A stretch of DNA of 64,000 nucleotides from Phallusia mammillata (taxonomy: Eukaryota): positions 6,944,001-7,008,000 of the forward strand of contig OZ281498.1 of assembly GCA_965637545.1 (NCBI GenBank), given 5' to 3'. The notes under the pieces are model-generated. The model made no database searches, was not told where the DNA came from, and worked only from the letters and a program-made list of their open reading frames with translations. The position numbers were made by a program, and so were the translations under genes. Positions 321 to 23,286 of the stretch are shown one piece after another (the stretch's first letter is position 1; every line of letters starts with the position of its first letter).

Positions 321-725
321 TTGGCGGTGCAAATAAAAAACGTGATAAATCGTTTGGCAAAAGCAATTGCTTTGTACTTTAAAAAACTTGTTATTTTGGG
401 GTTTGATGATACATCCGCTAAACACTTTTTAAAAATAAACTCATTTTGGAAAAATTATACTCAATCTGACCGTTTGAACAAGCTTTTTGCGTTTGAAAGG
501 GAGTATATAAAAACATTACATGGAAACAAGGATACTAGTTGCAATCAGGATGAATATAAAAAAGCGTGTATTGATGCTCTGGCAAAGCAGCTCACTAGAT
601 ACCCCAATCACTCATCTTTACCTATAAGTGCAATAACTGCAATAACTGCTAAGCAAACAGTAAAAACGATTCGATATAAATGGTTCAATAACCTGGCATT
701 TAGAAAATGCGTCCAACAGTCATAG
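321..725 (+). pseudogene. N-terminal segment of the transposon polyprotein, no recognised domain
   Basis: 134-aa ORF overlapping the PHD ORF at 707-725 next to an A-run (gtcaaaaaacatg), consistent with a frameshifted continuation. Confidence 0.45.
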
Positions 726-1258
726 GTCAAAAAACATGTTGTGTTTGCAAAACTGTTTGGTGCGGAGAACAAATGGTAGAATGTGAATCGTGTTTACAAT
801 GGTTTCATCCACGATGCGTGTTTCAAAATGTCACCCCCCAAAAATTTAGCAACGAGCAATGGAATAAGCTTCATTTTGTATGTAATAATTCAATTGTAAA
901 CGACGCCGATCCAAAAAACGTGTACCGCCATGCTTCCATTGATATAGGCACAATCAGTACGAGCAAGCCAGCATCCCCTAACTCAATTAATCCCGTTGTT
1001 TCAACTAGTATTTCAAAAACTCAACCGCTATCATCCGACTTTTCTGACGAAAGCCTCTCACCTGCCACGGACGCCATGTCAACTCACGCGAACGATTGCG
1101 CATTTTCTGATAATTTAAGCGATTGTAGTGTCGATTCACAAATTGAGAGCACAATTCAAAACAGTTCGTCAGAGGAGAAATGGATTTCGACAAATGTTTT
1201 AAACGACCTTGGTAAAGTTAAAAAACAAACAACTTCTCTGATGCAATGTTTACGTTAA
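707..1258 (+). pseudogene. PHD-finger plus Ser-rich linker segment of the transposon polyprotein
   Basis: CCVC-x(11)-CESC-LQWF-H-PR-C...HFVCNNS matches the C4-H-C3 PHD pattern, but the eighth ligand is Ser instead of Cys. An S/D-rich low-complexity linker follows. Confidence 0.75.
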
Positions 1259-3468
1259 CCTGCAAGAAAAAATTCACAATGATCTTGACGTTTGGGACAG
1301 TATTACAAAAAAACGCACTGCGAATAAGTTTGGGAGCAATGCGTACAAAGACACTATTTTTTAAAAAAATACGACAAATATATGATAATTGCGTCCCTAA
1401 CATTGAAAGCCATTATTTACGGGATCCCCAAAATGTCAATACTATTAAGCCAAATTCCGACAGCTACCTCGAAGGAGCAATCAAACTGTATTGTGCCCAC
1501 GGGAGATGCTGCAACTGTGAAATAAAAATATGTGTGGATTTGATTTCGTTCGTGGATCGAGTTGAAGGCCAAGTAACGGTAAGAGGCATGCGAAACCACC
1601 AAAAAGGTTGCAAACGGAGACGACGGGCATCTGGTAAAAGACGGGGCCAACTTAAACGCCAACTTCAATTTCAGTCTGCGAATAAATTACAAAGAAAATT
1701 ATTTGACAATTTAACAGAAGCGGAACGTTGGTTAGGTGCACATACTTTTTTACCCTCTCAATCCGTGCTTCGCAACATAAAAAGCGAAGGTAAATCCATG
1801 TTCCATTATTTTAAACTATGGTTTATAAATTTGTTGCACTTTCTCCAGTTAAAAAAGCAACGAACTTTTGTTCGCCTAATATGCATTCATCCCCCGTCTG
1901 TAACATTATATTCAAATCCACAAGTAAAACTCTATTTCGATCTTTGTTTAAAAGATATCGTCTACTTTGATGCTACTGGAAGTTGCCTCCGTAGTCAAAA
2001 TGGATACTCTGATTTTCAGGTGTATACACTTTTAGTAAGAAACCCTACTAAAGGGGAAGTGGCACTTCCGATGGCAACAAACGTTACCACTTGTCATGAC
2101 AGCAACAGCATCAGCCTTTTTTTTCGAGTTTTTTTTTATGAACGTTGTAAAAATTTGTAAAGTTTCTAGAAAACCGGCTTTTATAATAATTGATGAATCC
2201 ATGGCCATGTGGAATGGGGTTCTTAAAGCCTTATGTAGAGAATCGCGCCTTGAATATTACAATCGTTGTCACCCCATAGTAGTTGGGTTGCCACTCAAAG
2301 ATGATTTAAAACTAACAATAGTGCATAATTGTTACAGTCATGTCATGAAAGCAGCCAAAATTCTTTGCCTGAAACAATGGTCCGACAAGAAATTAGCTCA
2401 GTCGGCTCTATACTGGATAAATTTGCTTTTTACTTGCAAAACTATTAAGGAATTAGATGATGCTGTTGCTAGTTTAATTATTTTAACCCACTGCGAAAAA
2501 AACTCTCCCCTTGTAGAAAAACATTTTAACAATTTGAAACATAAACTCGATAACTCCCCAAATGAAAACGTTAACGATAACACCTTTGAATTGGACCCGG
2601 GTGATGATGCAGATTATTTTTTTACTGGAAAAAGTGATGATGCTTTACAAGAAAAAAATCCCGATTTTTTCATCGTTACGACAGAATGTTTAAAAATATC
2701 ATGGTTTCAGACGAGTACAACATACAACTGTCAGCAAATCTTGAAAACAATTTGTACCACAATCCAACTTTTTTCAAAATATTACTTGAACGGGTACTGA
2801 GCAGAATTTGTTGCACATCACATCTATTGCTAGGGGATTTATCTCGACATGTTGCCGACGACACGTCGCCTGAGCAGCATGAGCTGTACTTAGATTATTC
2901 AAATAAATGTGACAAATTAAGTAATGTGAAATTTCAGACCATTTTGACAAACAATAACACACAAGGAATTATAGAACAACATTTCGGGGACATGAAACAA
3001 AATTATATCGACGGTAAAAGAGTAGCACGAATAGACGACTTTGTCCATCTATATCACAAAGCGATAAAGGTTCAGGAAAAACAATTTGCTGACAGTTTGA
3101 TGCATTTAAATAAAAATACGCAAAACACTGGAACAGACGAAAAATCCACGCCTCTGGTTTTGGCGCAATTTAAAAAACGAAAACGAAACTCAAAAAGCTT
3201 CTATTCGTCACCACGATTGGCAAAACGAATTCGGTTTCAAAATAATAGTACTAAAGACAACAATGTATTAACCCGTACCCCAACTTTGGCGCATTTTTCC
3301 TTTGTTCCATCAACTCCCTCTGTCGTAAAAATGGTGAAAACATTGGCAAATTATATTTGGCATCATGTGACATTTACTGACGCATCAATTTTAAATCAGG
3401 CTTTAATAACGCCCAACGGCAGTCCACTAACATGGGAACGGTGCCCTATGCATTTTCTCTATTGGTAA
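1246..3468 (+). pseudogene. MULE/NOF-type DDE transposase split over three ORFs by two frameshifts
   Basis: First Asp in VYFDATG (1969-1971), second Asp in IIIDES (2192-2194), CxxH in HNCYSH (2330-2341) and Glu in TNNNTQGIIEQHF (2974-2976). This order and the CxxH motif are typical of Mutator-like transposases. Frame switches lie in T-runs at about 2116-2137 and A/T-runs at about 2650-2690. Confidence 0.8.
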
Positions 3469-3474
3469 CAAATT

Positions 3475-4821
3475 TTGATTCCAAATTCGTTAAATTTAAC
3501 GAAGAACAAAGCATTTAAAAACTTGCAAGGAGTTATGCAGCCCATCTGTCGGCCAACAGACGGTCAAATCAGGAATAACTTACTTATTCCTATCCTATGG
3601 AAAAATCATTTTATGTTAATTTGGTTTTGCAAAGATAAAATGGAACTTAAATTATTTGAATCAGCTAAAGAACCCCAAAACGAACTTGTTAAGTTAATAC
3701 AGTCCCATCTAGTGCCGTTTTTAAATGACATTACTGGCCCAGGCTCAAAGATTAAATTCTTCCATGACACTTTAATACCACAAACAGACCAGTTAAGTTG
3801 CGGAGTTTGCGTTTGTTATGGAGTAGACCGAATTATTTCAAACGTATCAAAACAACCCCTATGTAATCCTAAGTTTTTCGGTCAGTGGATTGCATACGCC
3901 TTAGTAGAAAATTCGCCACAGTGCAATTTTGCAATAAAACGACATTTAGACGAACAAAATGACCAATCCGTCGGTTTGCAAAACTTTGGAAACACATGCT
4001 GGTTAAATTCTGTTTTTCAATCACTTAAATTCCTCATGAAGCAAAAGTTTGCCAATTCACCTCGTACGGCTGTTTCTGACCCCGTTGCTAACTTTTTAAC
4101 TTCCTTAAGTAACAAATCGTACGACGTAGACGTCCATCGCAATTTGATTAAAAAAATCTGTAAAGATCTTAAATGGAACTTTAGTAATCAACATGATGCC
4201 GGCGAGTTTTTAATGTTATATCAAAATGGTAGTCTGCTAGAAAACTGTGGCCTTAATCCTATGCATCAATTTCGGTCAACCACCACCTGCCAAACCTGCA
4301 AAAGCGTCCAGAATCAAATGGAACCGGAGCAAAACTTTTGGTTTGTTCCGATGTACCAAAACATAGTTGCTGGCAGTAAATTAAGCAAGTATTTCGATAA
4401 ATGTTGCAATGAAATCTTTTTGGCAAACTGCTCCACTTGCGGCAGTGAAAAACAGTTTGAAAAAAAATTAAAACTTGTTTCAACTTCCGACGTTTTGCCG
4501 ACCGTATTGCCACGATCTAGTATTAGCGGAAAATGCACCAAAACGATTTTATCGGATTTGCGATTGACACTAGGAGACGCTGTGTTTGTTTTAAAATGTG
4601 CAATTGTTCATGTTGGCGCGCAATCCAGTTCCGGGCATTACATGGCCTACTCATTTGCGGAGCAAGGAATATTAGAATACAATGACAAAAAAATCAAACA
4701 TGTTAATTGGGACAATGTTGAACATCGAATACAGAGTGGCGCATACATTTTGTTTTACACTAAATTATCTCAAATTCCCCAGAATATGCTAAGTACAAGC
4801 CAAATCCCTATCACAATCTAA
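3475..4821 (+). CDS. Tandem Ulp1/C48-like protease plus USP/C19 ubiquitin-specific protease domains (transposon-borne)
   Basis: Ulp1-like: IPILWKNHFML (His 3607-3609), LFES (Glu 3658-3660 at the usual Asp position), PQTDQLSCG (Gln 3781, Cys 3799-3801). USP: Cys box VGLQNFGNTCWLNSVFQ (Cys 3997-3999), QHDAGEFL, two CxxC pairs (CQTC, CSTC), His box HVGAQSSSGHYMAY (His 4636-4638), YND (Asp 4684-4686) and terminal AYILFY. Confidence 0.9.
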   Translation: MIPNSLNLTKNKAFKNLQGVMQPICRPTDGQIRNNLLIPILWKNHFMLIWFCKDKMELKLFESAKEPQNELVKLIQSHLVPFLNDITGPGSKIKFFHDTLIPQTDQLSCGVCVCYGVDRIISNVSKQPLCNPKFFGQWIAYALVENSPQCNFAIKRHLDEQNDQSVGLQNFGNTCWLNSVFQSLKFLMKQKFANSPRTAVSDPVANFLTSLSNKSYDVDVHRNLIKKICKDLKWNFSNQHDAGEFLMLYQNGSLLENCGLNPMHQFRSTTTCQTCKSVQNQMEPEQNFWFVPMYQNIVAGSKLSKYFDKCCNEIFLANCSTCGSEKQFEKKLKLVSTSDVLPTVLPRSSISGKCTKTILSDLRLTLGDAVFVLKCAIVHVGAQSSSGHYMAYSFAEQGILEYNDKKIKHVNWDNVEHRIQSGAYILFYTKLSQIPQNMLSTSQIPITI

Positions 4822-5469
4822 AGAAAAAAAAAAAGAAAACTTAACTTACAACACGCTAACGCTCAAATTTCTGAAAAAAATTTTTTTGAAAATTATCCGT
4901 TGTACCACGCTACTTCAGATAATGTAATTGATAAAATAACTGAACTGGATTTAAACAACAAGGACAGAGAAATTTATCATACTGTAACAGAACACTTGCT
5001 ACGTGATATGAGTATGAACTGGACCAACGCCCAATGTGTAACTGCTGGGTATAGATACTGCCTTTATTTGACCTTATCAAAATGCGACCTAAAAAAGTAT
5101 TATCAAAATTTTTCATTTGAGAAAAGCAATATTTCGACAATTGAAACCTTTAATTTGTGGCAATACGTAAAGCATTTCCTGTGCCGAGAAAAAATTAGGA
5201 ACCGCCAATTTTCAGACGGCCAAATTGTTAGTTCTTCAAGAGTGGGATTAGAATTAAAACCAAATTTAATTTCGAAACAAAGCTTGTTGAATTCCGTTGT
5301 TAACAAAACAAATTACAATTTGCTCGAATTTTTGGATATAGTTGTAAACCGTGAGGCTATAATTTACTACCAGGCTACCTGCGATGAAACGTCGTACGAC
5401 GTTGCTACTGCTAATTTCTCCTTATCCTGTAATACTTTTGAAAAAAACCAACAGTCAACTACGAAATAA
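4822..5469 (+). pseudogene. In-frame C-terminal extension of the transposon polyprotein, unrecognised domain
   Basis: The frame is open from 4822 (RKKKRKLNLQ...) through the 4900-5469 ORF, in the same frame as the protease ORF and separated from it by one TAA. Confidence 0.5.
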
Positions 5470-5510: not shown

Positions 5511-6014
5511 CAGGGGTCTCAAACTCAAAGTGCTTTGAGGGCCAAAAACAACAAACTATTAAGTAAGTCGAGGCCCGCACTATCGAAACATTTGTTACAG
5601 TGTAGCATGACAACAAACATATTGCGTGATTAAAAAGGGGAAATGTTCATTAATCCCATTATCTTTATTGAACAAACAATATTGTGATAAATAACAAACA
5701 AATATACAGTGTAGCAAAGTGAAAGAGCCAACTCTGCCCTGTTGCTTTGTGTGGAAACAATGGCATACAGTGACACCACAATAACAGTGACGCAACAATC
5801 GCAATTGCTGATTCTAAAGAAGGACTATTTCGATTATGCCATTTAAACGTTGCAAATACTGCTATCAGAGAATGAATATATCATGTAAACTCACTAGTTT
5901 TACTAGGTATTCCGCCCGAGTAAAACACATAACTTCTAAAAGTTCCTTCGCGGGCCGCACAAAAAACCTTGGAGGGCCGCATGCGGCCCGCGGGCCGCGT
6001 GTTTGAGACCCCTG
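5511..6014. mobile_element. hAT (Buster/Charlie-type) MITE
   Basis: Perfect 14-bp TIR caggggtctcaaac / gtttgagacccctg. Perfect 8-bp TSD ctctaggc (5503-5510, 6015-6022). GC-rich gggccgc subterminal motifs. Confidence 0.95.
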
Positions 6015-6453
6015 CTCTAGGCCCAGGTAAAATACGGCTATTGGCAAAGGTCCTGGGTTAACAAAAAAACCGAACGACCACCGCAAGGACTGCCTCCTGG
6101 GCGTGGTTGGAAAGTCCTAGTTAAAGTTGCAAACTTTAAGGTAGAATTCGTAATACAAATAAGTTTTACTTTAGTATTCCTGATTAGCCACTTAAAAGTT
6201 AAAGATAAAATAAATTCAGCTAAAAAGCATGGCCATAAGGTTTTAAACTTAAATAAATTTGTCCCGAACAAAAAAAACGCTTTTTTCCAAATAAACATTT
6301 TGTTAAATTTTCAGTTATCGGACTGCCGCCTGATTGTCGATAAAAAAAAAAAAACATTTCGAAACATGTATATGGTAAACGGATAAACCACATACATTTC
6401 CACAAAAAAACTCGAATTCTCATTTCGGCGAAATGACGGTGGTTAAAAAACAA

Positions 6454-6488
6454 TGTAAGCCGCGGCTTACAATCGAGTAAATACGGTA
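6454..6488. mobile_element. Isolated transposon-like terminus (CCGTA-type end with TA, as in pogo/Tc2-like elements)
   Basis: 18-bp perfect palindrome tgtaagccgcggcttaca followed by atcgagtaaatacgg|ta. No partner end was found in the window. Confidence 0.35.
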
Positions 6489-6659
6489 TTTATGAAACGA
6501 TGTAGGGTTTTCGCCTTGTTTAGTAGTTCCTCCGTTAGGTTTTATTCTGACATTTGTTTAGTGTTTACCAATGTCCTTGTATAAGGCAGTTGCTGAAACT
6601 GAGTAGCACTCGTCAATTTGATCATTATGTATCAACGTTAAACAATCAAGTTGGAAAAT

Positions 6660-9600
6660 ATGTAAGCATGATATGCCTGCTTTGTTAGTCAATAGTTTTT
6701 TAAATTTTTCATTGTTTTAAACTTTTAGTTATTTTGTTTGCGCATTTCAAAGCAAGGTTGTACTTGTACCTAACATTGCATTTAACTACATAATATAAGA
6801 AATTTGATTGACTGCACAACTCAACATTTCATGTGCATACCATCCAGCAGGGAATCGTCATAAGTATTGTGTTACTTTAGGCCTACTTGTTAATATATTT
6901 GTTTACAAACAAAGGTCTGAAACACAGAGGAGAGATTGTTTTCAACAAGTAATTGAAGATGTCGGTATCAAACAATGGTTTGAGTATGTGAGAAAACTAG
7001 GACTTTCAGAACCCGATATTCAAAATGCATGGGAGCTACAGGAAGTAATCAGTGAAAAGAAACACAAAATGCTTATTACTTGGAGCAACTACATTGGTAA
7101 TAATGTGTGATATTGTACTTGCTCTCCCTCTCTGTAGAGGTTTACCAGTATATTTTTAGGAAATTTCAATGACAACCAGAAAAAAATACTGAATGAGGTT
7201 AAAAGGGAATTGTATGGTCCCAGAGTCACAGGCCTGGACAATCACCTGCCAGTAAAACTTTTAGCTAGTAAGACTTTCTTAGTCGGCTGTACATAATTTA
7301 AAAGTTTTCAATGTTTTCAATTTGTAGCAAATGTTTTTAGGCACCCCAAACATTGTTAAAAAGGATCTAGTGAAAATAATACTCACCCACTGATGTGACT
7401 GTGTCAAAGCAAATACTATATCAAATCAAACATGCTTCTATTTTTTACAATGACTGTCGCTAAATGTTACGGGACATAAATATGTGCTAAAATGTGTTTT
7501 ACTCCAAACCACTGTTTCCCAATCTTTGGTACTTATATATACCACCAGTATCAATAAAAGCTGTGATTTAAAGTCTTTGTAAAAATGCATTTTTGGGGTT
7601 TGTTCATAAGTTTTTGTACCAGGGGACAACATTTCAACACAACACTAGCAAAGTTTTGCCATTGATCCTCATGATTTTGGCCAATGCAAACATAGGGGTT
7701 AAACTTTAACTTGGCTAAGAATGATTTCAAGTCTGTGTATAGCAGTGGTTCCCAACCTTTTTGTAGTCACAGACCCCTTTTATAAATTTTAGATGCCAGA
7801 TGACCCCCAAGGTAACTTTTCTTAAGTCTTTATGTTTTTCGTTTCTTTCATAATATGTTACTGTACTTTTTGGGTAGCATTTTTGCTCAACCTTCACACT
7901 CCTTAATTTTTTACTGTAGCAACAAAGAGATATATATATTCTAGTGTACGAAGGTTGAAACAAAGCATTATAAATTCCATTGTTCATGTGTGTTGTGATG
8001 TCACAATGGGACTAACAATCACAAAAAAGTAATTTTTCCTGACCCGAAGGTTTAATTAACAGTCTGCACTTGTATGCAGGTAAGTAAAAACGGGTCAAAC
8101 ACTTACACATTTTTTACTGTTGGTAAATGGTACTAAAATGTTTGCCTCCAAGGACCCCCTAAAACCATCTCACAGCCCCTTGGGGGTCCGCGAACCTTAG
8201 GTTGGGAACCACTGGTGAATAGTGTTTTTAATGATTTTATGTGCTTTAGAAAAGTCCAGTTGCAAATAACCGAACTGACAAAATTAAGTTAATAATCAGT
8301 CCAATGCAACTTTTCATCAGTTATCTGTGTATGTTTTTGTGTTTAATTCGACACTATTGTATACTCCAGATCGGGACAAAGCATGGCTTATATACCTGTT
8401 TGTCAAGTTTTACTGTGCTGATGCTGTCTTTTTGGGAATTGTTAGAGGAAAAATGGAATTAACTGAAGATAATATTCAACAAATCAAAAATGATTATTAC
8501 CAAAACACTAGTGAACAAAAGTTTCAGATGGTGTTGACTTGGTGCAAACAAACAAATAAAAGTAAGTAAACATAGACGCTAATCCAGACAACAGCACTGC
8601 TTACATAATTTTCTTTGAAAGTACATTTTTGTTGCTATCTTTCGGGGGATTTTATGATTTCAAAAATATATACTGTTTTACTGTTCTTATTGTAATTATC
8701 AGCCTGCTTTAATTTTGGTTAAGCTTGCCCTATTTAAGGTGTTAACCTTTGCTCCTATTTAAAAACTATTGTGTCTTGTATTATTTATTTGTGCTGGTGG
8801 CGATGTGTAGTTGTAAAATAATTATTTTTTTACTTTAGAACTGACTGCTGAACACTTTTGTGCAGGGCTGACCAATTATGACACATGCATTGCAATATGC
8901 TCCAGCCTACACAATAAATTATTTCTGCATAGGTGTTTGTCCAACCCACCTTCAGGGTCATATATATATATGTATATATTCCAGATACTGTGCATGAAAT
9001 TGCCCATGGCTTTAGGCACTTAAATGCCTATGTTCCTGATGAATTCGATTTTATTTTTCAACCTGTGCAAACAGAGAATGGTTCCAGACAAGAAGGTAAA
9101 AAACTTTTTGATACTTTTTCTAACAAACATGAACATATGTTGATCACTTGAATAATCCTTGAAGCATTTAGACCAGCGATGATGACATGGTCAAAATCAT
9201 AGTATGCCAGGCCTGTTGAACATGTTATACATAACCTAAAGCTAAGTTCTTTTTCTTTTCAGATCATGTGGATGGATCAATATCTGAAGGTCCTGTGACT
9301 TGCAATGTTTCTGCAGGTGCACAATTCATTATTTTCATGTCTAAACAACTATGTCAAAGAATTATATGATAGTTTGGTATATTAGTTTGAAAAAAACACA
9401 ACTTGTATAATTTATTAATACATTAAACCAACAATGCAGCATTTCCATTCTTTTATTGTTAAACGTTGTTATAGATTTTTCTTGAAAAAACAAATTTTTA
9501 CAACACTTGTATTTAAGTCAATAGGTTTAACTTCAGAGCAAAATTGGCATTTTAAAGTACAAAAAACATAGTTAAAAGGTAAACTAATCTTTACATATAC

Positions 9601-10635
9601 CTACATACCTTACATAGAGTTTTATGAAGTCTTCAGACCTAGTATGTTTTATTTGCAGTGAACCCCTCACAACCATCACTGCAGGTATATCTACTTTTTG
9701 GTGAACTCTTTTCAGTTTTTTAATCATGACTAATTGATTTTTAGAATCCTCCTGTAGAGTGCTGCCTAATGTTCAGCTATGCACACCAACTTTCTACAAT
9801 CCCTAGACAGGTAAAAGTTTTAAAAAAACCTTTCTTGGCCACATGATTTAAATGACTTTGTCATGATTTGGCTTACAAAGTAGCCAAAAGTACTAAAACC
9901 TTTCCAGCAAAACATTAGTATTTGACTCAATCAATCAAATACTTTTTTTTGTTTTATTAAACTCAAGTATTCAATGTTGTCCTTTTTTTGCAGATTGCAT
10001 TGCGCATCACCAAGAGCCCTGATCTTAATTTTAGAATTTGGATTGATGAAGAAAATATCCATGGCCGATTGTATTCCTCTATGGCAGACGCTGTGAAGCA
10101 ATGCCACATTTTTTTAATGTTTATTTCCAAGGCATATCAAGAGAGCGACAACTGTAGAAAGGAGGCAGTTGCTGCTTCAAAACAGAAAAAACATATTATT
10201 CCTATCAAAGTAGAAGAAGGTTTTAAGCCTGACGAATGGTTAGGTAATTATAATAGCTTGTATGAAATTGACAAACAGGATTCAAAACCTACCATGTACT
10301 GTATAATTTTGTTGATTAAACAGCAAACAGATACAGTCGACTTGTTATTATAACTGGCATGATAAAATACCTACAATAAAGAAATTCATGCAGCAATCCT
10401 GCCTTAAGGGCAACTTGTTTTGAATAACAAACTAAAACAATAAGGTAGAATTTGTTTGACAAAACATTTGTTAAACTAAAATGAATCACAATAAAGTAAA
10501 TGTTTACAGCAGACTTTATTTGACTGTTTCTTAGACTTGATCATGGAAGACCTAAAGTACTTTGATTTTACTAAACATCCGTTTGAGGAAGAGTTTAATG
10601 CATTGCTGAAAGAAGTTCAACTCTACATTCGATGA
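6660..10635 (+). CDS. Gene 1: death domain-death domain-TIR protein (about 363 aa, MyD88-like architecture with a TIR_2-type domain)
   Basis: Phase-consistent exons 6660-6661 (AT of a split ATG, tentative), 6915-7096, 7160-7267, 8370-8561, 8985-9095, 9263-9316, 9659-9684, 9745-9810, 9994-10243, 10535-10635 (TGA), all GT-AG. DD1 is FQQVIEDVGIKQWFEYVRKLGLSEPDI...KMLITW and DD2 is ...MELTEDNIQQIKNDYYQNTSEQKFQMVLTW. The TIR reads LMFSYAH...IWIDEENIHG.LYSSMADAV...FISKAYQESDNCRKEA...IIPIKVEEGFKPDEWLDLI...YFDFT. Confidence 0.85.
7743..8214. mobile_element. hAT (Buster-type) MITE in gene 1 intron
   Basis: Perfect 16-bp TIR cagtggttcccaacct / aggttgggaaccactg. TSD gtgtatag / gtgaatag (7/8). Confidence 0.9.
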
Positions 10636-10892
10636 ATAATAATTAACATCAGCTATGTCGAGATTAAAGTTTACTCATAGTCTTAAACCTTATTGACTTG
10701 GTTGTTGGCAGCAAGACAATGTTAAATGATGATGTATGTAAAGCACTGTGATGGTTTAATTTTCTATGTTCAATGTACTGGTAAAAGCATACCTTCTGTG
10801 TTATTTTGCTGATATAAGCATATCTTTTTTGTATATTACAGTTTTATTGGTTATTTTTATGGGTCTATACCAAAACTTTTAATTATAATATA

Positions 10893-11730
10893 CATGGGTC
10901 CCTTTCCCTGAAGGGGACACATATTGATTTTACTCTAATCGTTTTTTCTTTTTGTTTCCTGAAAGTTTGTCCCACTCGTTTTGCTGTCAAATGTTTGATG
11001 GATTTGGATGAAACTTACACAGATGGTAGATTTTGTTATGTGGATGTGAATCCCACTTTGTTTGTGTTGATCACCCCAGCATTTACGCTGCTAGCCCCCT
11101 AAATTGTTTTTTTCCCCAAAGCTTGCCCGACTCGTATTGCCATAAAATGTTTCATGGATTTGGCTGAAACTTCCACAGATATAGTTATGTAGATGTGCAT
11201 TCCACCTTGCTTGTGTTGATAACCCCAGTATTTACCCCGCTAACCCCCTAAAATGTTATTTTTCTTTCCAAAGTTTGTCAACTAAAATAAGTGATCGTTT
11301 AAAAAACGTCAGAATTAAATGAAATTTGCAAAGTTTATTGAACATACTATTTTAAGTCCTCAATTGTTGTGTTTTAGTACCACAATTCCAGCTGGCCCCT
11401 AAAATGAGTGACACTTTTAACAATGTTTAAATTTAATGAAAATTGGACAGCTTGTAAATTTGCTAGTTGTAGGTGTCTATTTTTTGTTTTACCCCATTAT
11501 ACCACTATTTACTCCTTTTCTTTAAAAAGAACGTTAAATAGAGCATACAATATCTGGGGTGAATCTAACTTGTATAGTCTGTGATCTACATAGTATTATT
11601 ATTAAAGCCCAGTGCCGATCACTGTGTTTTACCTTACAACACCCGACTTTCACATGGTTATCTCTTGAAATGCATTATTTTGCACCTTGCATGTGTGGGG
11701 ACCCATGAGTTTCTGCTTGCGGAAACAACT
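10893..11730 (+). mobile_element. Helentron-associated (HINE/DINE-1-like) non-autonomous element
   Basis: Subterminal inverted repeats catgggtccc (10893-10902) and gggacccatg (11698-11707), a 5' stem gtcccttt..aaggggac, and a 3' hairpin gtttctgc-tt-gcggaaac (11709-11726). Internally there are two clear tandem units of about 155 bp containing atggatttgg.tgaaactt, plus degenerate copies. Confidence 0.6.
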
Positions 11731-11953
11731 AAGGTTATAAAAGACGTTTGCTAATATTGGACTCAACATAAAATAAGCGAAGGAAATATATTAATGTTTT
11801 AAAATGAGTTGTAGTGTATGCGCAACGACAAAATGTGCCATGTCACCCTTCTACTTTCTTCCTGTTTCTTATTCCTTGTGTTGTTTGCATATGTACTTTG
11901 GCGGGAAATATTCAATGTATTTAGATGAAACAGTTGTGCTATTTGTTTTTTAC

Positions 11954-14079: not shown

Positions 14080-17000
14080 ATGACTGAAAACGAAGACCCC
14101 AACCGCCAGTAAGTTTTCTGTTTACTTTTTTCTCAAGTATATTTGTGTTATACCTCATTCCATTACATCAGTTTTTTTGTGGCAAAGTTTTTGTGTTGAC
14201 TACCAAAAGGGCAAATAGTTTTTATAAAGTTAAGTGTAACTGTGCATGTTGGCTAATATATAAAGCACTTCTAAAACTGTGGTTATTTTGATAAAGCTGT
14301 TTATGATCTCTAATACAGTGGTTTCCTAACTTTTTTGTGGTACCAGTTTTAAGGTTACACACCCTGTTTTCAAGCAGAAACTGTTATATACATACTGAAT
14401 CTAAAAGTGTAGTACAATGAAGAGCTTAGCATACTAATGCACCATTTGTAAGTTCTTGCTTTCCAATGTACTTTTTGCACTTTCTGTACACCTAAATTCC
14501 CTAGACACTAGTTTATTGGTGAGTGCATAATCGAAGAAAAAACGTTTTGTGTACAAAAAGTTACTAGCGTCCTACTTTTGCACCAGATTGTAAGTGATAC
14601 AACAATGTGTTTCAGTAACAGAATAACTAAGTGCTGATAGCTGTTCACAGACCACCGGGAATGCTGTCTTGCTAGTGGTACACATATATACTATTGGTAG
14701 GGAACCACTGCTCTAATGTCAATGATAAAAGTTGACCTATGAGTTTGTGCTAAGGTTATTAAAGTGATTAATGCTCTATACCAGGGGAGTGCAACATACG
14801 GCCCGCGGGCCACAGTCCGGCCTGCCAAGCTTTTTAGTGTGGCCCCCACCAACACACTGATATAGATAAAAAATGCAATTCTTCTAAGAATTTGGCAAAA
14901 TTTTCCACTAGTTTTTAGTAAATCTCCTAAGTTGCTATACTATATGTAACAATATAAGCTAAATTAGCGTTTTCCAACTAGTGGATCATACAGCAGTTAC
15001 AACAAGTAGCCTACTTCACTGCATGTGACGTAACAATTCCCTTTGTCTTGTAAACAATTACTTTGTTGCGAAAGCCAGCGTTGCGCCAAAACTTTATATG
15101 TTGTAGAAAATAAATTGGTTGATGCTTTTGGAAGAATTTCGAATTTATTGTGCACATGAAAAAAAGTTATGTGGCCATCGCTTGAGGTCAGAAATTGGTT
15201 ATACAGCCCACCTATGAAAAATGTTGCACACCCCTGCTCTATACTGTGATCAGTTTTTTTTAAGGTTTGGTTTGGGTGACCGCTAAGTAGTTTTAAGAGA
15301 CCGCAAGTGTTTCATTTAAATACCAAAAAATAGCCATATTTGCTTATTTGGGAAACCGCTGGAAAAATTTGGGGGACCGTTTCGTTCCCCCAAAACACCT
15401 TAAAAAAAACACTGACTGTGATTTTTTCAGACTTACTAATGCAGAAAAAAATGAGGTATTTGCGAATTTAATTTCCACTATTGGTGGCATGTGGCATGAA
15501 TATTTGAGAAAACTTGGAATGCCAGAATCTGATATGCCAACACAACCAGACAGTAAAACTGACAAACATGCTGTGTTATGTCAATGGGTTATGAAAATTG
15601 GTACGTTGTTACACAAGTTTATGTGGTTGTGGTATAAATTTGAAAAGCAACCACGTATTGACAATGTCTTTTAAGTTTAACTGATTTGCAAATATGTTTG
15701 GACAGGGACACTCACTGCTGAAAAAGTTGTTCTAATGCGCAAAGTAAGACATGAGGTTTTAAATCCAGAGGAACCAAGAAAATGTGAGGTTGATAGAAGC
15801 CTTCCAGAAAAACTTGCACAAAGTAGGTGTCATATGGCTCTTTATTTATTTGTTGATTTGTTTATGTCAGGTGTCTGCAATTTTTTAGGCGGCACATGCC
15901 AATTTACTTTTATTTCCATGTGTTAAGCCCTCGCGTGCCAACGCTTTTTCAAATAGTAGTGGTTCGTGTCAGCAGATATTAATATTAAAGAGAAAGCAAA
16001 GTGTTTTGTGCATGTAAGGGTGAATTTTAAGACAATGGCATAATAAAAACTATAAACAAGCAGTGTGACATTAAAACTATAAGCAAGCAATTGTTACTTC
16101 AATATAAACACGCCAATCGGTTGGGATGCCATGAAAAACCACCTCGCGTGCCAACGCATGTCAGGTGTTGCCGACACCTGGTTTATGTATTTAATAAAGA
16201 AGATTCAGCTACTTTTTATGTAACACTCTAAACAACTATTGAACACTGATTATTTAAAAGTGTCTGAATAAAAATCATTATGGATTGTGACATGCTTTTG
16301 GTACATAGTGTTTTTGTCCTAATATTATTTACCTGTCTTAGTCATTTTTGTAACAATATTCAAGTTAGAATAAGTTTTATAGGTTGAACCATTGTAAGTT
16401 TTATGCAACTTTTAACTGAATTTAGTCATAACTAAAGGTGTCTGTCATATCTGATTTATATCTACTTTGATTGAAACATATGGACTGCGAAACTAGCCTT
16501 GATTTGCAGCAATTTGAAACATAAAAGATGATGTAGCACTTCAAAAGAATTCGATAGCATTATTGCAAGTTTAAAATTTTTTCCCAACCCCCTTTTACTT
16601 TTCCTGGATCCAATATTGTGCTCCCTCTTACAGCCCGTCAGTTACATTTCTGGTCTTCTAAAACAGATCATTTCAAAATGAAAACTGAATAAACATGAAA
16701 TGGTCTGAGTCTGTCCTTATGATGTGATTAGGGGCATATACTGTAACTTAAATTTATAAACTTCCCCAATGACATCTATTCCCATTTACTCTGGGAAATT
16801 ATGCTATAAAATTCATGTCTGCTAGTCAGTAGTTGTTTCATTGCCTATTTTATTCAATAATTTAAAATGACATGTACAGCAGTAAATGCCTTCTTCCAAG
16901 TGTAAAAACAGACCTGAAATTTAAAAACCTGTTATGCCAAAAAGTTTTGCGCTGTCTACAGCTTAGAATTGCTGAGGTGTCAAGTGGTGGCATCAGGTCC

Positions 17001-18673
17001 TATTATTATCTATTATCCTAAATTCCTAATGACAACACCAAAAATAATTTTAACGAAACCTCAGTGCTAAAAACACTAAAGGGCGAAAACACCTTTCTGA
17101 AGCAGTGATGCACTTGTTAAATTGCCACAGTCACAAATACTGTGGAGTTAGTTACTGGAAGACAGACATTATGCCAAGCATTGGAGGTTTAGCAGCAGAC
17201 CTTTAGAAGACACTTTAATTGAATATTTGTAACTAACCATCGGCTCGGTGGACAACCTGAACTGATGATGACAACAGAGATTGTTGAATTGACTGCATCA
17301 TGTATTCTATATACACCAGTTATATGGTACCTTTGTTTATGATTAAATTCATTTTAAAGTGAGTGTATATTGTTCCTAAACAGTTCCAGGTTTGGCAGAA
17401 ATAGTTTTTATTTCAATTAGTCTTTTGTCTGCCATAGTTTTCTGGTATCCTTTCAGTGTTTTAACTGCTTTTTTCTGTTATAGGTCGTGATCGAGCATTT
17501 TTGCTTTATTCTGTTATGGACAACTTCTATGGTAAGAGTTGGAAGGAGATCGCTCGGCGAGAATTGAAGATTCGTGACAGTGTTTTGTTTGATATTTGTG
17601 AAGATCACAAAACCAGTCAAGAAAATCGATACATGGTGCTTGCTTACTGGGTCCAGAAAAAGGGTTTTAGTGAGTGTTATATGTAACCTTGTTATGTGTT
17701 TGGCTACTCCTGGGGTCGGCAACCTTTAAGGCGACGCTTGCCAATTTACTTGTTATTTTCATGTATTAATGACCTTGCATGCCAACGTTTTTCTAAATAA
17801 TAGTGTGGCTTGTGTCAGCAGGTATCAATAAAAAAGAGAAAACATTATGTTTTGTGCATGTAAGTCTGAATTTTAAGACAATGGCATGATAAAAACTATA
17901 AAAAGCAGTGTAACAGGTTAAGATGTTACTTTAACATAAACACGCAAATCGGTTGGCGTACCATGAAAAACAACCTCCCGTTCCAACCTTGGCATGCATG
18001 CCAGGGGTTGCCGACCCCTGGGCTACACTTTGTATTATAAAATAAATATGCCATGGCTTTAATTGTCCCATCTACGTAGCTTAGTAGATAAAGCACAGTA
18101 ATTCAAGTACATCCATATTTGGCTATATTGTAGTTTACAAGAATACATGTTTTTTCCTTTATTTACCGCATGTCATAGATAATTATCTTTGTTTAAAAAC
18201 TGGTGTTCTAGCTCATTTTAGCTTTCTACAAGCAAGCAAATTAAGTTGCTATGGTATGATCACTACATAGTTGCTTCTAGTAAATACCTAGTGTGAAAAC
18301 TTAATACTTTGTTGTGTACCTTGGTATTAGTTAATTTCCTGGAAATGGCATGGTATTTTTAAATATTTACTTTTTAAGCAAAATTACCAAATAATGACAC
18401 ACCTGCATACACTCATTACACACATCTGCGCAACACTCACAAACAAAAACGTATTTTTATTGCAATATATATAATCTCCTTCATCATTGTAAGCATTGCA
18501 AATTGTACATAATGAATATAGTACATAAATTTGCTGCAAAAACGAAGTCATGTTTTCTAATCATTGACCTACTTTGTTTGCAGGGAGCAATGTTGAAATA
18601 GAGCGTGCATTAATAGACTTGAAATTGTTGCACCCTAATGCATATGTTAACCGTGAAGGGGCCGAACAGGAAT
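14080..18673 (+). CDS. Gene 2: tandem death-domain protein, paralog of gene 1 without a detectable TIR (3' end uncertain)
   Basis: Phase-consistent exons 14080-14108 (MTENEDPNRQ), 15431-15600 (LTNAEKNEVF...WHEYLRKLGMPE...QWVMKIG), 15706-15822, 17484-17669 (RDRAFLLY...WKEIARRELKI...YMVLAYW), 18584-18673. Intron phases and positions match gene 1. A possible last exon is 18912-19132. Confidence 0.8.
14316..14710. mobile_element. hAT (Buster-type) MITE
   Basis: TIR cagtggtttccta / tagggaaccactg (12/13). TSD ctctaata / ctctaatg (7/8). Confidence 0.85.
14782..15236. mobile_element. hAT (Buster-type) MITE
   Basis: TIR caggggagtgcaacat / atgttgcacacccctg (15/16). Perfect TSD ctctatac. Confidence 0.93.
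15868..16180. mobile_element. hAT (Buster-type) MITE, family X copy 1
   Basis: TIR caggtgtctgcaa / ttgccgacacctg. Perfect TSD gtttatgt. The internal sequence is shared with 17710-18020 and 39848-40124. Confidence 0.92.
17710..18020. mobile_element. hAT (Buster-type) MITE, family X copy 2
   Basis: TIR ctggggtcggcaacc / ggttgccgacccctg. TSD ggctactc / ggctacac (7/8). Shares the internal gccaatttacttgttattttc...tgaattttaagacaatggcat. Confidence 0.9.
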
Positions 18674-21003: not shown

Positions 21004-23286
21004 ATGACTAATGTGTAAGTTTCATCTTTTAGGATTATAACAACTGCAAAATGTTAGGAGTTTTTAATGCAATTCGTATTTATTCTTTTTTATAGTATGG
21101 AATGTTATATAATGGTACCAATTAATGACACTTTGTGTGCATCCTTTTGCCTTTATTCAAACAGATTATTGTATTTTGGAGTTCCATTTATATCTTTATA
21201 ATTGAAACTGGTATTGGTTTCCCAAGGAAAACTTTTTGCCTTTTTCATTTTGTAATCTGTAGCAGCACTTGCTTGTTATAAATTGTTATGAATTTTTTAA
21301 AACAGGTGCATATGGTCTACAGCTTTTCAGTCTGTATTGCTTCCCAGATTGCCTCAGTGGTTTTCCCATCTTTGCCACAAAAGAACAATTTTAATGAGCA
21401 CTGCAAGCCACTATAAATCGAAAAATGATAAAAATTATTTACAGCGGCAGGGTGAAACAGAAATTTATTGAAATGTAGTTTGGGTAGTTCAACTTCATTT
21501 GCCATTTTTATCATTTACTGTCAAATGGTAATATTTGCTTTTACTTTCTGTGGTTAGAAAAAAATATTATACAGCACTGACTTTGTGCTGAACGTTTTTC
21601 AACTTTACAACTTGTTTTTCTGTTTTTACTTGTTGTAAAGGCAAGTCTGAGTATGGTTGTGTGACAATTTTATCTCCATTTGCACGAAGTTGTAGGTAAA
21701 AAGGGGGGATCTTTTGGTAAATAATATTTTGCTTTGTACCTTTGTCTGGAAAGTGTGTATTATTTATTAAAATCCTTTATTGGATCAAAGTTTTTTAACC
21801 TTTCAGACTTACTAATCGAGAAAGAAATGAACTTTTTGATCAGTTGATTGAAGATGTTGGAAAAAAATGGCTGGAGTTCCTGCGGAAGCTTGGAATGCCA
21901 GAGAATTTAATTATGGACCAAAACACAACCAAACATGCAATGTTAAATCAATGGGTCATGAAAATGGGTATATTACTTGATTTGTGAATAATTTGTAAAA
22001 AATGTTCTGACTGTCCTTGAAAAATAGGCTTGCTTTTTATTGGGTTACTGTTGAATGTACCTAATTGTCGCAAGACGAAATATAAAACGAAAAAAAAGAT
22101 AAAATATTGATGTAACTGCTGTTTTGTAGGTAACCAGTTTATTTATGGTTGGTCTAACATTGTCTTGCCAATGTTTTTGTTGAGTTATATATATATATGT
22201 GTATGCTGCACACAAACTCCATATTTTGTCCTTGTAGCAACGAACAAATCCTTACACTCTTTACTGTTGTAAGAACTACTGTGTAAAAATACTCTGATCA
22301 GCTGCAATGAGATAAGTTTAAAGTTTACATGATTTGCTATATTTTGTTGGTAAAAATAATTAATGATTTCGGGAACTGGAACAAATGGCATTTAACTGAA
22401 CTTTGCTAATTTTTTTAGGTGCGTTGGATGTTAACAGAAAACAGTTAATAAAAAAAGTGAAACACGAAGTGTTTAATGCAGATGAAAGAAATCGTGATGT
22501 TGACAGTGGACTTGAATCAAAACTTGCAAAAAGTACTTCTTTTCTACCCTACTATTCAACCTAGCAAGAAAAGTTAAATATAAAAATGTGTAAAAATTGT
22601 TGAAAGTTAAATCTCGATGAAATAAAATGTAACCCATTAAAACTGATACTGTATAAAAACTAGCTCTTTTTGTGTGCTCTTAAATGAATTCGTTTTAAAG
22701 TTCTATGCACATATTGCTGTTCTAGCAAAACAATGTTTTTTCTGTATTGCAGATCGTGATCGGGCATTTTTACTATATGGCTTTGCGAAAACATACTATG
22801 GTCCTCAATGGGATGATATTGTTCGGAACAAATTTGAAATGGATAGCAACGCATTGCATAATATAAATGTAGACCATGAGGCTAACCAGGAAAAACAATA
22901 CCAGACACTTCTGCACTGGATTCAAAAAGAAGGATTTGGTAAGTTTATGTTTTATCCAATTACAACAATTTTGGAATCCTGGTGAAAACTTGTGCACTTA
23001 TAGTAGATATGGCTGTGGTGACGTGTTATCTGTTTCTTTCACTCAATATCCCCAGTGATTAACACTGCAAGCTTCCAAAGAGAAGAAAAAAATACATTGC
23101 TATGGATTGGCTGATATTAATGTAGTATTTTTTTACATTGCACTAGTAACACACAAAGAAACAGTTTATGTTTTATATTATATAATGTGCTTACAGAGAC
23201 AAATTATGAAATTGGAGATAAACTCAAGAGTTGGAATTTAGTTGTGTCACGGGAATACACCACCGCCATGGGTACACAATCTGAAC
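21004..23286 (+). CDS. Gene 3: tandem death-domain protein, paralog of genes 1 and 2 without a detectable TIR (3' end uncertain)
   Basis: Phase-consistent exons 21004-21014 (MTNV), 21807-21967 (LTNRERNELF...WLEFLRKLGMPE...QWVMKMG), 22419-22532, 22753-22938 (RDRAFLLY...WDDIVRNKFEM...QYQTLLHW), 23197-23286. The candidate phase-1 acceptors downstream (23409, 23577, 24075) all reach a stop within 16 codons. Confidence 0.8.

What the first reader, a model, noticed from the sequence alone, without database searches (positions are those of the whole stretch)
6660..10635. Double-death-domain TIR protein with an intact NADase-type glutamate
Seen: two death domains, each split by a phase-1 intron at the same position (an internal two-exon duplication), then a Pro/Ser linker of small exons and a TIR with NCRKEA (Glu at 10162-10164). 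Established: MyD88 has one DD plus TIR, and enzymatic TIRs (SARM1, plant and bacterial TIRs) need this Glu and are activated by oligomerisation, which death domains provide. Inference: an adaptor-enzyme hybrid in which DD filament assembly switches on NAD+ cleavage or signal-molecule synthesis. This differs from both MyD88 (non-enzymatic) and SARM1 (ARM-SAM-TIR).
Basis: partly seen in the sequence, partly recalled or inferred. Interest (0 to 1): 0.75.

Follow-up and report, generated by a model that had tools for sequence, protein, structure and literature searches.

The report
Sea-squirt double death-domain TIR protein
The sea squirt Phallusia mammillata expresses a gene that joins two death-type assembly domains to a TIR domain of a family in which some animal members make NAD-derived signals, but nobody has tested whether this TIR is an enzyme.

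Summary
Spliced RNA contigs from four studies join ten exons, 6660-10635 (+), into one 363-aa ORF. A UniRef record of Phallusia mammillata (311 aa) matches residues 53-363.

The protein has two divergent death domains, a disordered linker and a C-terminal TIR_2 domain. Both death domains are closest to RIPK1/TNFR1/DR3 death domains, and none matched MyD88. The Glu sits at 10162-10164 and aligns with the catalytic Glu of Cat1, RPS4 and TIR-1.

- The Glu is a family signature (S-x-N-C-R-x-E; Glu in 95% of 326 related domains), not a special feature of this gene.
- The Trp usual at -4 is Asn.
- A 2026 preprint tested TIRs of the same broad sequence type in E. coli. Five were active, including one with N-C-K-K-E. 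Nine were inactive, including a Phallusia TPR-TIR.

So catalysis is plausible (about 45%) but unshown, and death-domain-driven activation is inference.

The DD-DD module occurs only in this gene and two TIR-less tandem neighbours. None of 272 related TIR proteins carries it.

Verdict: a real, lineage-restricted new architecture built from known parts. Interest is moderate.

The parts
6444..6661 (+). First exon: 5' UTR plus the first two bases (AT) of the start codon. The 5' end is approximate.
   Evidence: RNA contigs start at 6444-6528 and join 6661 to 6915 in 4 runs. An in-frame stop lies 7 codons upstream of the ATG.
6915..7096 (+). DD1 first-half exon (aa 1-61); ends in phase 1
   Evidence: Joints. 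Pfam Death E 5.5e-4, HMM positions 2-55. DD1-type profile hits the RIPK1 death domain at 3e-5.
7160..7267 (+). DD1 second-half exon (aa 62-97); ends in phase 1
   Evidence: Joints. Helical in the AF2 model. No Pfam hit on its own.
8370..8561 (+). DD2 first-half exon (aa 98-161); ends in phase 1
   Evidence: Joints. Pfam Death E 0.017 on the exon. DD2-type profile hits the RIPK1 death domain at 1.1e-4. hhalign to the DD1 type gives E 8e-6.
8985..9095 (+). DD2 second-half exon (to about aa 187) and the start of the linker
   Evidence: Joint 8561|8985 in all 4 runs. The Pfam Death match on P0001 runs 73-123, which crosses this junction.
9263..9316 (+). Linker exon (18 aa)
   Evidence: Joints. pLDDT below 50. 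Composition.
9659..9684 (+). Linker exon (26 nt)
   Evidence: Joints.
9745..9810 (+). TIR exon 1 (beta-A strand, motif M-F-S-Y)
   Evidence: Joints. TIR_2 match on P0001 183-303. Strand E179-184 in the model.
9994..10243 (+). TIR exon 2 (BB loop to beta-D), containing S-D-N-C-R-K-E
   Evidence: TIR_2 E 1.4e-12 on the exon alone. pLDDT above 90.
10162..10164 (+). GAG codon of Glu304, at the position of the catalytic Glu of enzymatic TIRs
   Evidence: Coordinates. Aligned with the Glu of Cat1, RPS4 and TIR-1. Glu in 310 of 326 family domains.
10535..10635 (+). TIR exon 3 (alpha-E helix) and stop codon
   Evidence: Joint 10243|10535. ORF ends at TGA 10633-10635.
10636..10933 (+). 3' UTR (end approximate)
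   Evidence: Transcript contigs run on to 10923-10933.

Best explanation
This is an intact, expressed, cytosolic 363-aa protein of the ascidian Phallusia mammillata. It was made by fusing a tandem death-domain module to a three-exon TIR_2 cassette. The death domains are of the RIPK1/TNFR1/DR3 type, and the module is shared with two TIR-less neighbouring genes.

Shown: the exon chain, its expression, the identity of the domains, and retention of every residue that is invariant in this TIR family, including the alpha-C Glu (Glu304).

Inferred: the death domains recruit or cluster the protein in a death-fold signalling complex. Clustering brings the TIR domains together. The clustered TIRs then act as an induced-proximity enzyme that uses Glu304 to turn over NAD+, most likely to cADPR or ADPR, as in the active animal members of this sequence type. 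In this reading the TIR does not act only as a passive TIR-TIR adaptor.
For: Gene and expression:
- Identical spliced contigs in 4 studies and a 363-aa ORF.
- An independent UniRef record equals residues 53-363.

Death domains:
- Each DD type hits the RIPK1, TNFR1 and DR3 death domains.

TIR:
- TIR_2 at 62 bits and a confident TIR fold.
- The family profile scores enzymatic TIRs best: Cat1 3e-12, RPS4 9e-8, TIR-1 5e-6, against MyD88 6e-5 and SARM1 7e-5. The Glu is aligned to their catalytic Glu.
- Family signature S-x-N-C-R-x-E, with Glu in 95% of 326 domains.

Experimental precedent (10.64898/2026.04.20.719644, Table S4):
- TIRs of this sequence type are Glu-dependent enzymes in E. coli in 5 cases. 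These include Latimeria H2ZXV5, whose motif is N-C-K-K-E and which depletes NAD+.
- That paper notes that isolated-domain assays miss oligomerisation-dependent activity.

Established knowledge: TIR NADases need oligomerisation, and death domains form oligomers.
Against: - No assay exists for this protein.
- Nine TIRs of the same sequence type were inactive in the same screen, including Phallusia TPR-TIR A0A6F9DHT8.
- The Trp at -4 that contacts the ligand in SARM1 (PMC7075850) is Asn here.
- The Glu is also common in TIRs with no reported activity (PMC7075850).
- The fold search ties enzymatic and scaffold TIRs.
- The DD2 model gave no death-fold match, and DD2 has lost the conserved helix-2 Trp, so its ability to assemble is uncertain.
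- The self-association prediction gave no answer.
Confidence: 0.45

Rival explanations
1. It is a non-enzymatic adaptor, a functional analogue of MyD88. The TIR only docks onto other TIR proteins (the two TLRs or TIR_2 proteins). The tandem death domains recruit a death-domain kinase or FADD/caspase-type partner. The Glu is kept for structural or interface reasons.
For: - DD plus TIR is the classic adaptor layout.
- The Glu is conserved in many TIRs with no detected activity (PMC7075850; discussion of TLR2 and IL-1R9/10).
- Most tested members of this sequence type, including the Phallusia TPR-TIR, were inactive.
- There is no Trp at -4.
- The fold is as close to the MyD88 TIR as to SARM1.
Against: - Near-invariance of S, C and E in the alpha-C motif across hundreds of domains in very different architectures fits a shared pocket better than a shared partner.
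- Five members of this sequence type are Glu-dependent enzymes.
- The negative E. coli results are weak, since known plant enzymes such as RPS4 and RPP1 also scored inactive.
- The TIR is not of the MyD88 group.
Confidence: 0.35
2. It is a regulator or decoy. It is a fast-evolving protein with a degenerate DD2, and it titrates death-domain or TIR partners of the neighbouring DD-DD proteins or of TLR signalling rather than transmitting a signal.
For: - DD2 has lost the conserved Trp that both paralogues keep, and its model does not match a death fold.
- No orthologue was found by word-based search.
- It belongs to a tandem family that includes TIR-less members.
Against: - The TIR keeps all family-invariant residues.
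- The ORF is intact and spliced identically in four studies.
- Nothing positive points to inhibition.
Confidence: 0.12
3. It is an annotation artefact or pseudogene: the death-domain and TIR exons belong to different genes, or the ORF is broken.
For: The ORF-like piece at 8839-8932 would break the frame if it were spliced in. The UniRef model lacks the first 52 residues.
Against: Single contigs in 4 runs span 6444-10933 with all nine joints and an open frame. The piece 8839-8932 has zero depth in all runs.
Confidence: 0.02

Closest known systems
MyD88 (DD-TIR adaptor of TLR/IL-1R signalling)
   Same: An N-terminal death-fold module and a C-terminal TIR in a small cytosolic protein. The presumed logic is oligomeric assembly.
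   Different: - It has two death domains, not one.
- The death domains match RIPK1/TNFR1/DR3, and no MyD88 death domain appears even at E 10.
- The TIR is Pfam TIR_2, not TIR (62 bits on the protein against 17.5 bits for TIR on TIR exon 2).
- It carries the alpha-C Glu, which is rare in the MyD88 group (PMC7075850).
- Ciona has a separate canonical MyD88 (PMC12816324).
SARM1 / TIR-1 (ARM-SAM-SAM-TIR NADase)
   Same: A TIR_2-type TIR with Glu at the catalytic position. The oligomerisation domain lies upstream of the TIR. BB-loop Asp, Glu and Gly are kept, judged by eye from the TIR-1 alignment.
   Different: - No ARM or SAM domains.
- No Trp at -4, and it lacks the SARM1 alpha-C insert.
- The family profile scores SARM1 no better than MyD88.
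Invertebrate/early-vertebrate TIR_2 proteins of the S-x-N-C-R-x-E type (TPR-TIR, ARM-TIR, SAM-TIR, multi-TIR; 'ecTIR-DC' proteins), some shown to make cADPR or deplete NAD+
   Same: The TIR belongs here. There are 30-41% identical relatives in ascidians (Clavelina), amphioxus, rotifers, molluscs and fish. The motif and invariant residues are the same. The tree places it with amphioxus-type double-TIR proteins (support 0.82).
   Different: None of 272 collected members has this death-domain module. Activity varies by member (Table S4) and is unknown here.
Plant TNL resistosomes, bacterial TIR filaments (Cat1, SPARTA, Thoeris) and oyster TIR-STING
   Same: The proposed working principle: a separate assembly domain clusters TIRs and thereby switches on NAD+ chemistry.
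   Different: The assembly domain would be a death-fold module, which has not been described for an enzymatic TIR in the sources I could search. This is analogy only, not membership.

Membership tests
Death domain (Pfam PF00531, death-fold superfamily) | Match to the family HMM above the curated cut-off | tested here: not met
   20.4 bits for the DD1 first-half exon and 18.8 bits for DD2 in P0001, against a cut-off of 22.6. DD1 could only be scored as a half domain because the spliced protein has no reference.
Death domain (Pfam PF00531, death-fold superfamily) | Significant sequence-profile similarity to experimentally solved death domains, in register | tested here: met
   The DD1-type profile hits the RIPK1 death domain at 3e-5 and TNFR1 at 2.4e-4. 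The DD2-type profile hits RIPK1 at 1.1e-4. The joint profile hits RIPK1 at 1.9e-7, DR3 at 9e-7, TNFR1 at 1.2e-6 and Fas at 7e-4.
Death domain (Pfam PF00531, death-fold superfamily) | Six-helix antiparallel bundle fold | tested here: inconclusive
   The AF2 model of DD2 has 5 helices (pLDDT 71). It has no death-fold match by Foldseek, VIA-align or the atlas. The ESM Atlas's own model gives TM 0.48-0.49 to Death-containing clusters. The alignment was very shallow.
TIR_2 (Pfam PF13676) | HMM match above the cut-off and a TIR (flavodoxin-like) fold | tested here: met
   62.4 bits against a cut-off of 28, covering HMM positions 3-122. The AF2 TIR region has pLDDT above 90. Foldseek gives probability 1.0 to the SPARTA, MyD88 and SARM1 TIRs, with TM by target of 0.71-0.76.
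Catalytic (NAD+-processing) TIR domains | Glutamate on helix alpha-C at the catalytic position | tested here: met
   Glu304 aligns with the Glu of Cat1, RPS4 and TIR-1.
Catalytic (NAD+-processing) TIR domains | Aromatic residue four positions before the Glu (W-x-x-x-E of SARM1, AbTIR and plant TIRs) | tested here: not met
   It is Asn here and in 75% of family domains. This is not universal among active TIRs: Latimeria H2ZXV5 (N-C-K-K-E) depletes NAD+.
Catalytic (NAD+-processing) TIR domains | Measured Glu-dependent NAD+ consumption or (c)ADPR product | not testable with these tools
   This needs expression and LC-MS. Only members of the same sequence type have been assayed.
Catalytic (NAD+-processing) TIR domains | Self-association that forms the composite active site | tested here: inconclusive
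   The two-copy TIR complex prediction returned 'no answer'.
MyD88 orthologue | Single MyD88-type death domain plus a PF01582-type TIR without the alpha-C Glu | tested here: not met
   Two death domains of RIPK1/TNFR1 type. The TIR is TIR_2 with Glu.
SARM1 orthologue | ARM repeats, two SAM domains, and a TIR with W-x-x-x-E | tested here: not met
   Pfam finds only Death and TIR_2. The motif is N-C-R-K-E.

The most novel reading that the evidence does not exclude
A death-fold-assembled TIR enzyme. Oligomerisation of tandem RIPK1/TNFR1-type death domains would be the switch that turns on Glu304-dependent NAD+ conversion (cADPR or ADPR signalling, or NAD+ depletion). That would couple death-receptor-type complexes directly to nucleotide second messengers in a chordate. 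The two TIR-less DD-DD neighbours would act as co-assembling regulators.
Probability: 0.3. Interest if true: 0.75.

Novelty: new variant of a known kind. Interest (0 to 1): 0.5.

Why it matters
Animal TIR domains are being re-examined as enzymes (two 2026 preprints). What couples their activity to upstream signals is unknown outside SARM1.

A natural fusion of death domains to a Glu-bearing TIR_2 domain gives a compact, testable case. The question is whether death-fold assembly, the standard animal way of building signalling hubs, can drive TIR catalysis. The species is a close invertebrate relative of vertebrates and has good experimental tools.

If the TIR is inactive, the gene is still a clear example of lineage-specific domain shuffling that creates a second, non-MyD88 DD-TIR adaptor.

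Tried and rejected
1. I first took the open piece at 8839-8932 for the second half of DD2. It breaks the frame and has no RNA depth. All runs join 8561 to 8985. Rejected.
2. The spliced 363-aa protein has no reference, so it could not be sent to Pfam, fold or search tools. I used exon references and P0001 (residues 53-363). Whole DD1 was therefore never scored or folded.
3. The DD2-only AF2 model gave no death-fold match in Foldseek PDB, VIA-align wide or the atlas. This is inconclusive, not negative.
4. The complex prediction with two TIR copies gave no verdict. It is neither evidence for nor against binding.
5. Word-based homologue searches with the whole P0001 and with its death-domain part found only P0001 itself. 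Orthologues in Ciona or other ascidians could not be checked, because no animal genome collection was available.
6. The name LOC100181987 appears in no held paper.
7. I looked for a canonical MyD88 in this genome through PF01582. The only two hits are TLR genes, and the exon-wise search probably misses MyD88.
8. The Foldseek ranking does not separate enzymatic from scaffold TIRs.
9. The assayed active TIRs of the 2026 preprint were not among the session's proteins, so I could not place them in my tree. Their kinship rests on the shared motif and on the inactive gar protein W5N735 (P0272), which is in my family set.
10. A search of the preprint's tables for double-Death TIR proteins found nothing, but the largest tables are truncated.
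Full report
**Gene model and expression**

The window is G000:C5:6944001-7008000 of a 240-Mb animal genome. The only database protein identical to the locus is a UniRef/nr entry of the ascidian Phallusia mammillata, 'Uncharacterized protein LOC100181987' (P0001, 311 aa).

I laid contigs from four runs, each from a different study, on 6000-11900. All four gave the same nine GT..AG joints. Spliced contigs cannot come from genomic DNA, so the gene is transcribed.

The exons are 6444(approx.)-6661, 6915-7096, 7160-7267, 8370-8561, 8985-9095, 9263-9316, 9659-9684, 9745-9810, 9994-10243 and 10535-10635. The 3' UTR runs to about 10930.

They give a 1092-nt ORF of 363 aa. The start codon is split by the first intron (AT|G), and an in-frame stop lies seven codons upstream of it. 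P0001 equals residues 53-363 with two substitutions, so an independent model uses the same chain but starts at an internal Met.

An open piece at 8839-8932 looked at first like a death-domain half. It is not spliced in, has zero depth in all runs, and would break the frame.

**Death domains**

Pfam Death matches the DD1 first-half exon (E 5.5e-4, HMM positions 2-55) and DD2 in P0001 (E 1.8e-3, HMM positions 24-74, crossing the 8561|8985 junction). Both are below the gathering score.

Two further genes downstream on the same strand carry the same pair of first-half exons: 15432-15605 with 17465-17662, and 21808-21972 with 22722-22919. I built a profile of the three DD1-type exons and another of the three DD2-type exons. 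Each hits solved death domains independently:
- The DD1-type profile hits RIPK1 at 3e-5 and TNFR1 at 2.4e-4.
- The DD2-type profile hits RIPK1 at 1.1e-4.
- The joint profile hits RIPK1 at 1.9e-7, DR3 at 9e-7, TNFR1 at 1.2e-6, Fas at 7e-4 and ankyrin death domains.

No MyD88 or IRAK death domain appears even at E 10.

DD1 and DD2 types are homologous in register (hhalign 83.6%, E 8e-6; z about 4). All three introns that flank or split the units are phase 1. This fits an old two-exon duplication that predates the tandem gene duplications. The second-half exons have diverged beyond recognition.

At the fold level DD2 is unresolved:
- The AF2 model is helical (five helices, pLDDT 71), but it finds no death fold.
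- The ESM Atlas's own model gives TM 0.48-0.49 to Death-containing clusters.
- DD2 of this gene has lost the conserved helix-2 Trp that both paralogues keep.

**The TIR**

TIR_2 (PF13676) scores 62 bits on P0001, whereas the classical TIR model PF01582 scores 17.5 bits on TIR exon 2. With a 61-sequence alignment, AF2 models the domain at pLDDT above 90.

Foldseek ranks the SPARTA, MyD88, SARM1, Hydra TRR-2, RPS4 and Cat1 TIRs almost equally. The fold is a canonical TIR and does not discriminate enzyme from scaffold.

By sequence, the family profile scores as follows:

| Solved TIR | E-value |
|---|---|
| Cat1 | 3e-12 |
| RPS4 | 9e-8 |
| C. elegans TIR-1 | 5e-6 |
| a TLR TIR | 9e-6 |
| MyD88 | 6e-5 |
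| SARM1 | 7e-5 |

The family's C-R-x-E aligns with C-W-D-E, C-V-R-E and H-K-E of the three enzymes. The TIR therefore groups with neither MyD88 nor SARM1.

Its nearest relatives among 1.84 billion representatives are TIR_2 proteins 30-41% identical to it. They come from the ascidian Clavelina, amphioxus, bdelloid rotifers, molluscs, echinoderms and non-teleost fishes, with multi-TIR, ARM, SAM, ankyrin or TPR partners. In a FastTree of 326 domains it sits with P0004, an amphioxus double-TIR protein, and P0010, which also has two TIR domains (support 0.82).

**The glutamate**

It is a family signature, not a peculiarity of this gene. Across 326 domains from 266 proteins, the motif positions are conserved as follows:

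| Position relative to Glu | Residue | Share of domains |
|---|---|---|
| -6 | Ser | 97% |
| -4 | Asn | 75% |
| -3 | Cys | 96% |
| 0 | Glu | 95% |

The Trp at -4 that contacts the ligand in SARM1 is absent.

The literature bears on this in two ways:
[quoted passage not shown] It is frequent in TLR1/2/6/10 and rare in MyD88, TIRAP and endosomal TLRs, and it does not track known activity (PMC7075850).
- A 2026 preprint (10.64898/2026.04.20.719644) reports that most non-TLR animal TIRs keep the Glu, and that 12 of 61 tested animal TIRs made cADPR isomers or depleted NAD+ in E. coli in a Glu-dependent way.

Its Table S4 includes domains of this same sequence type (M-I-S-Y ... W-x-D ... S-x-x-C-x-x-E ... 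W-L-G):
- Active: Latimeria H2ZXV5 (N-C-K-K-E, NAD+ depletion), Clupea, Magallana gigas A0A8W8J0Z4, Adineta steineri and Branchiostoma lanceolatum A0A8J9VAE2, the last four making cADPR.
- Inactive: nine others. These include the gar protein W5N735, which is P0272 in my family set, and a Phallusia TPR-TIR, A0A6F9DHT8.

The authors stress that isolated domains in E. coli miss oligomerisation-dependent activation. Known plant enzymes such as RPS4 and RPP1 also scored inactive, so the negatives are weak. I put catalysis for this TIR at roughly 45%.

**Architecture and origin**

None of the 272 related TIR proteins collected carries this death-domain module. I checked the two nearest genomic TIR paralogue sites, one of which holds two copies. 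Neither has such exons within 10-20 kb upstream. The window has no second TIR.

Genome-wide, the DD1 exon finds the gene itself, one hit inside the window that belongs to the second tandem neighbour, and one weak hit elsewhere. Word-based searches for orthologues found only the protein itself.

The gene thus looks like a lineage-restricted fusion of a small tandem DD-DD family with a TIR_2 cassette. The only two PF01582-type TIR loci in the genome are TLR genes, both with W-C-x-Y-E. Ciona is reported to have a canonical MyD88 (PMC12816324), so this is an additional DD-TIR protein, not the MyD88 orthologue.

**Mechanism and rivals**

The best reading (0.45) is that death-domain-mediated recruitment clusters the TIRs, which then process NAD+ through Glu304. 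The steps shown are transcript, domains and conserved residues. The steps inferred are death-domain assembly, clustering and catalysis.

The main rival (0.35) is a purely scaffolding adaptor. A decoy or regulator role (0.12) is possible given the degenerate DD2. An artefact or pseudogene is essentially excluded (0.02).

**Novelty**

DD-TIR adaptors, Glu-bearing TIR_2 families and induced-proximity TIR enzymes are all known. The combination of tandem RIPK1/TNFR1-type death domains with such a TIR was not found in the sequences or papers I could search. I rate it a new variant of a known kind with moderate interest. It would be high if death-domain-driven catalysis were shown.

**Limits**
- The spliced protein could not be submitted whole.
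- No animal genome collection was available for an orthologue search.
- The complex prediction gave no answer.
- The scan's first stage had already noted the two TIR-less DD-DD neighbours (s1-392448). This agrees with what I found independently.

Noticed in passing
window 15432-15605 + 17465-17662, and 21808-21972 + 22722-22919 (+ strand): Two tandem paralogues, each with a DD1-type and a DD2-type first-half exon (31-40% and 18-21% identical to this gene's). No TIR exon lies anywhere else in the window. They are probably short DD-DD proteins and candidate partners or regulators of the DD-DD-TIR protein.
   Followed up: partly
window 7743-7758 and 8199-8214 (intron 3): Perfect 16-nt inverted repeats, 440 nt apart, which looks like a MITE. 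Unrelated RNA contigs with loose ends map to 7576-8360, suggesting a dispersed, transcribed repeat.
   Followed up: partly
window 10951-11262 and on to about 11900: Two to three tandem copies of a unit of about 150 nt (82-84% identical) just downstream of the 3' UTR. Summed RNA-contig depth is very high (up to about 6800 against about 130 for the gene), so this is an abundant repeat family.
   Followed up: partly
window 6394-6590 (5' UTR exon): Depth is higher here than over the coding exons. Several contigs diverge at 6488-6489 or 6444, and one contig carries 622 further 5' bases that do not lie in 6000-11900. The true 5' end, or a shared repeat, is unresolved. The UTR holds several upstream ATGs.
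   Followed up: no
window 27100-31200 (- strand): A series of open frames encoding Sushi/CCP-like repeats (C-x-N-P-x-x-P-x-N-G ... C-x-x-G-Y-x-L-x-G ... C), identified by eye. This is a complement-control-type gene next to the death-domain cluster.
   Followed up: no
window 707-5469 (+ strand): Six consecutive long ORFs (183-448 aa), unusual for this intron-rich genome and probably a transposable element. The scan has a separate note on it (s1-392400).
   Followed up: no
L013 (G000:C4:14524000-14533999) and L014 (G000:C3:31285000-31294999): The only two PF01582-type TIR loci of the genome are multi-exon TLR genes with LRR exons. Their TIRs carry S-S-W-C-Q-Y-E and S-E-W-C-R-Y-E, that is, the Trp and Glu of the catalytic-type motif.
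   Followed up: partly
window 8464: T to G in the transcript contig of run X1 only. It is a synonymous third position of Thr129. P0001 differs from the genome at Leu250Ser and Leu337Val. These are ordinary polymorphisms.
   Followed up: yes
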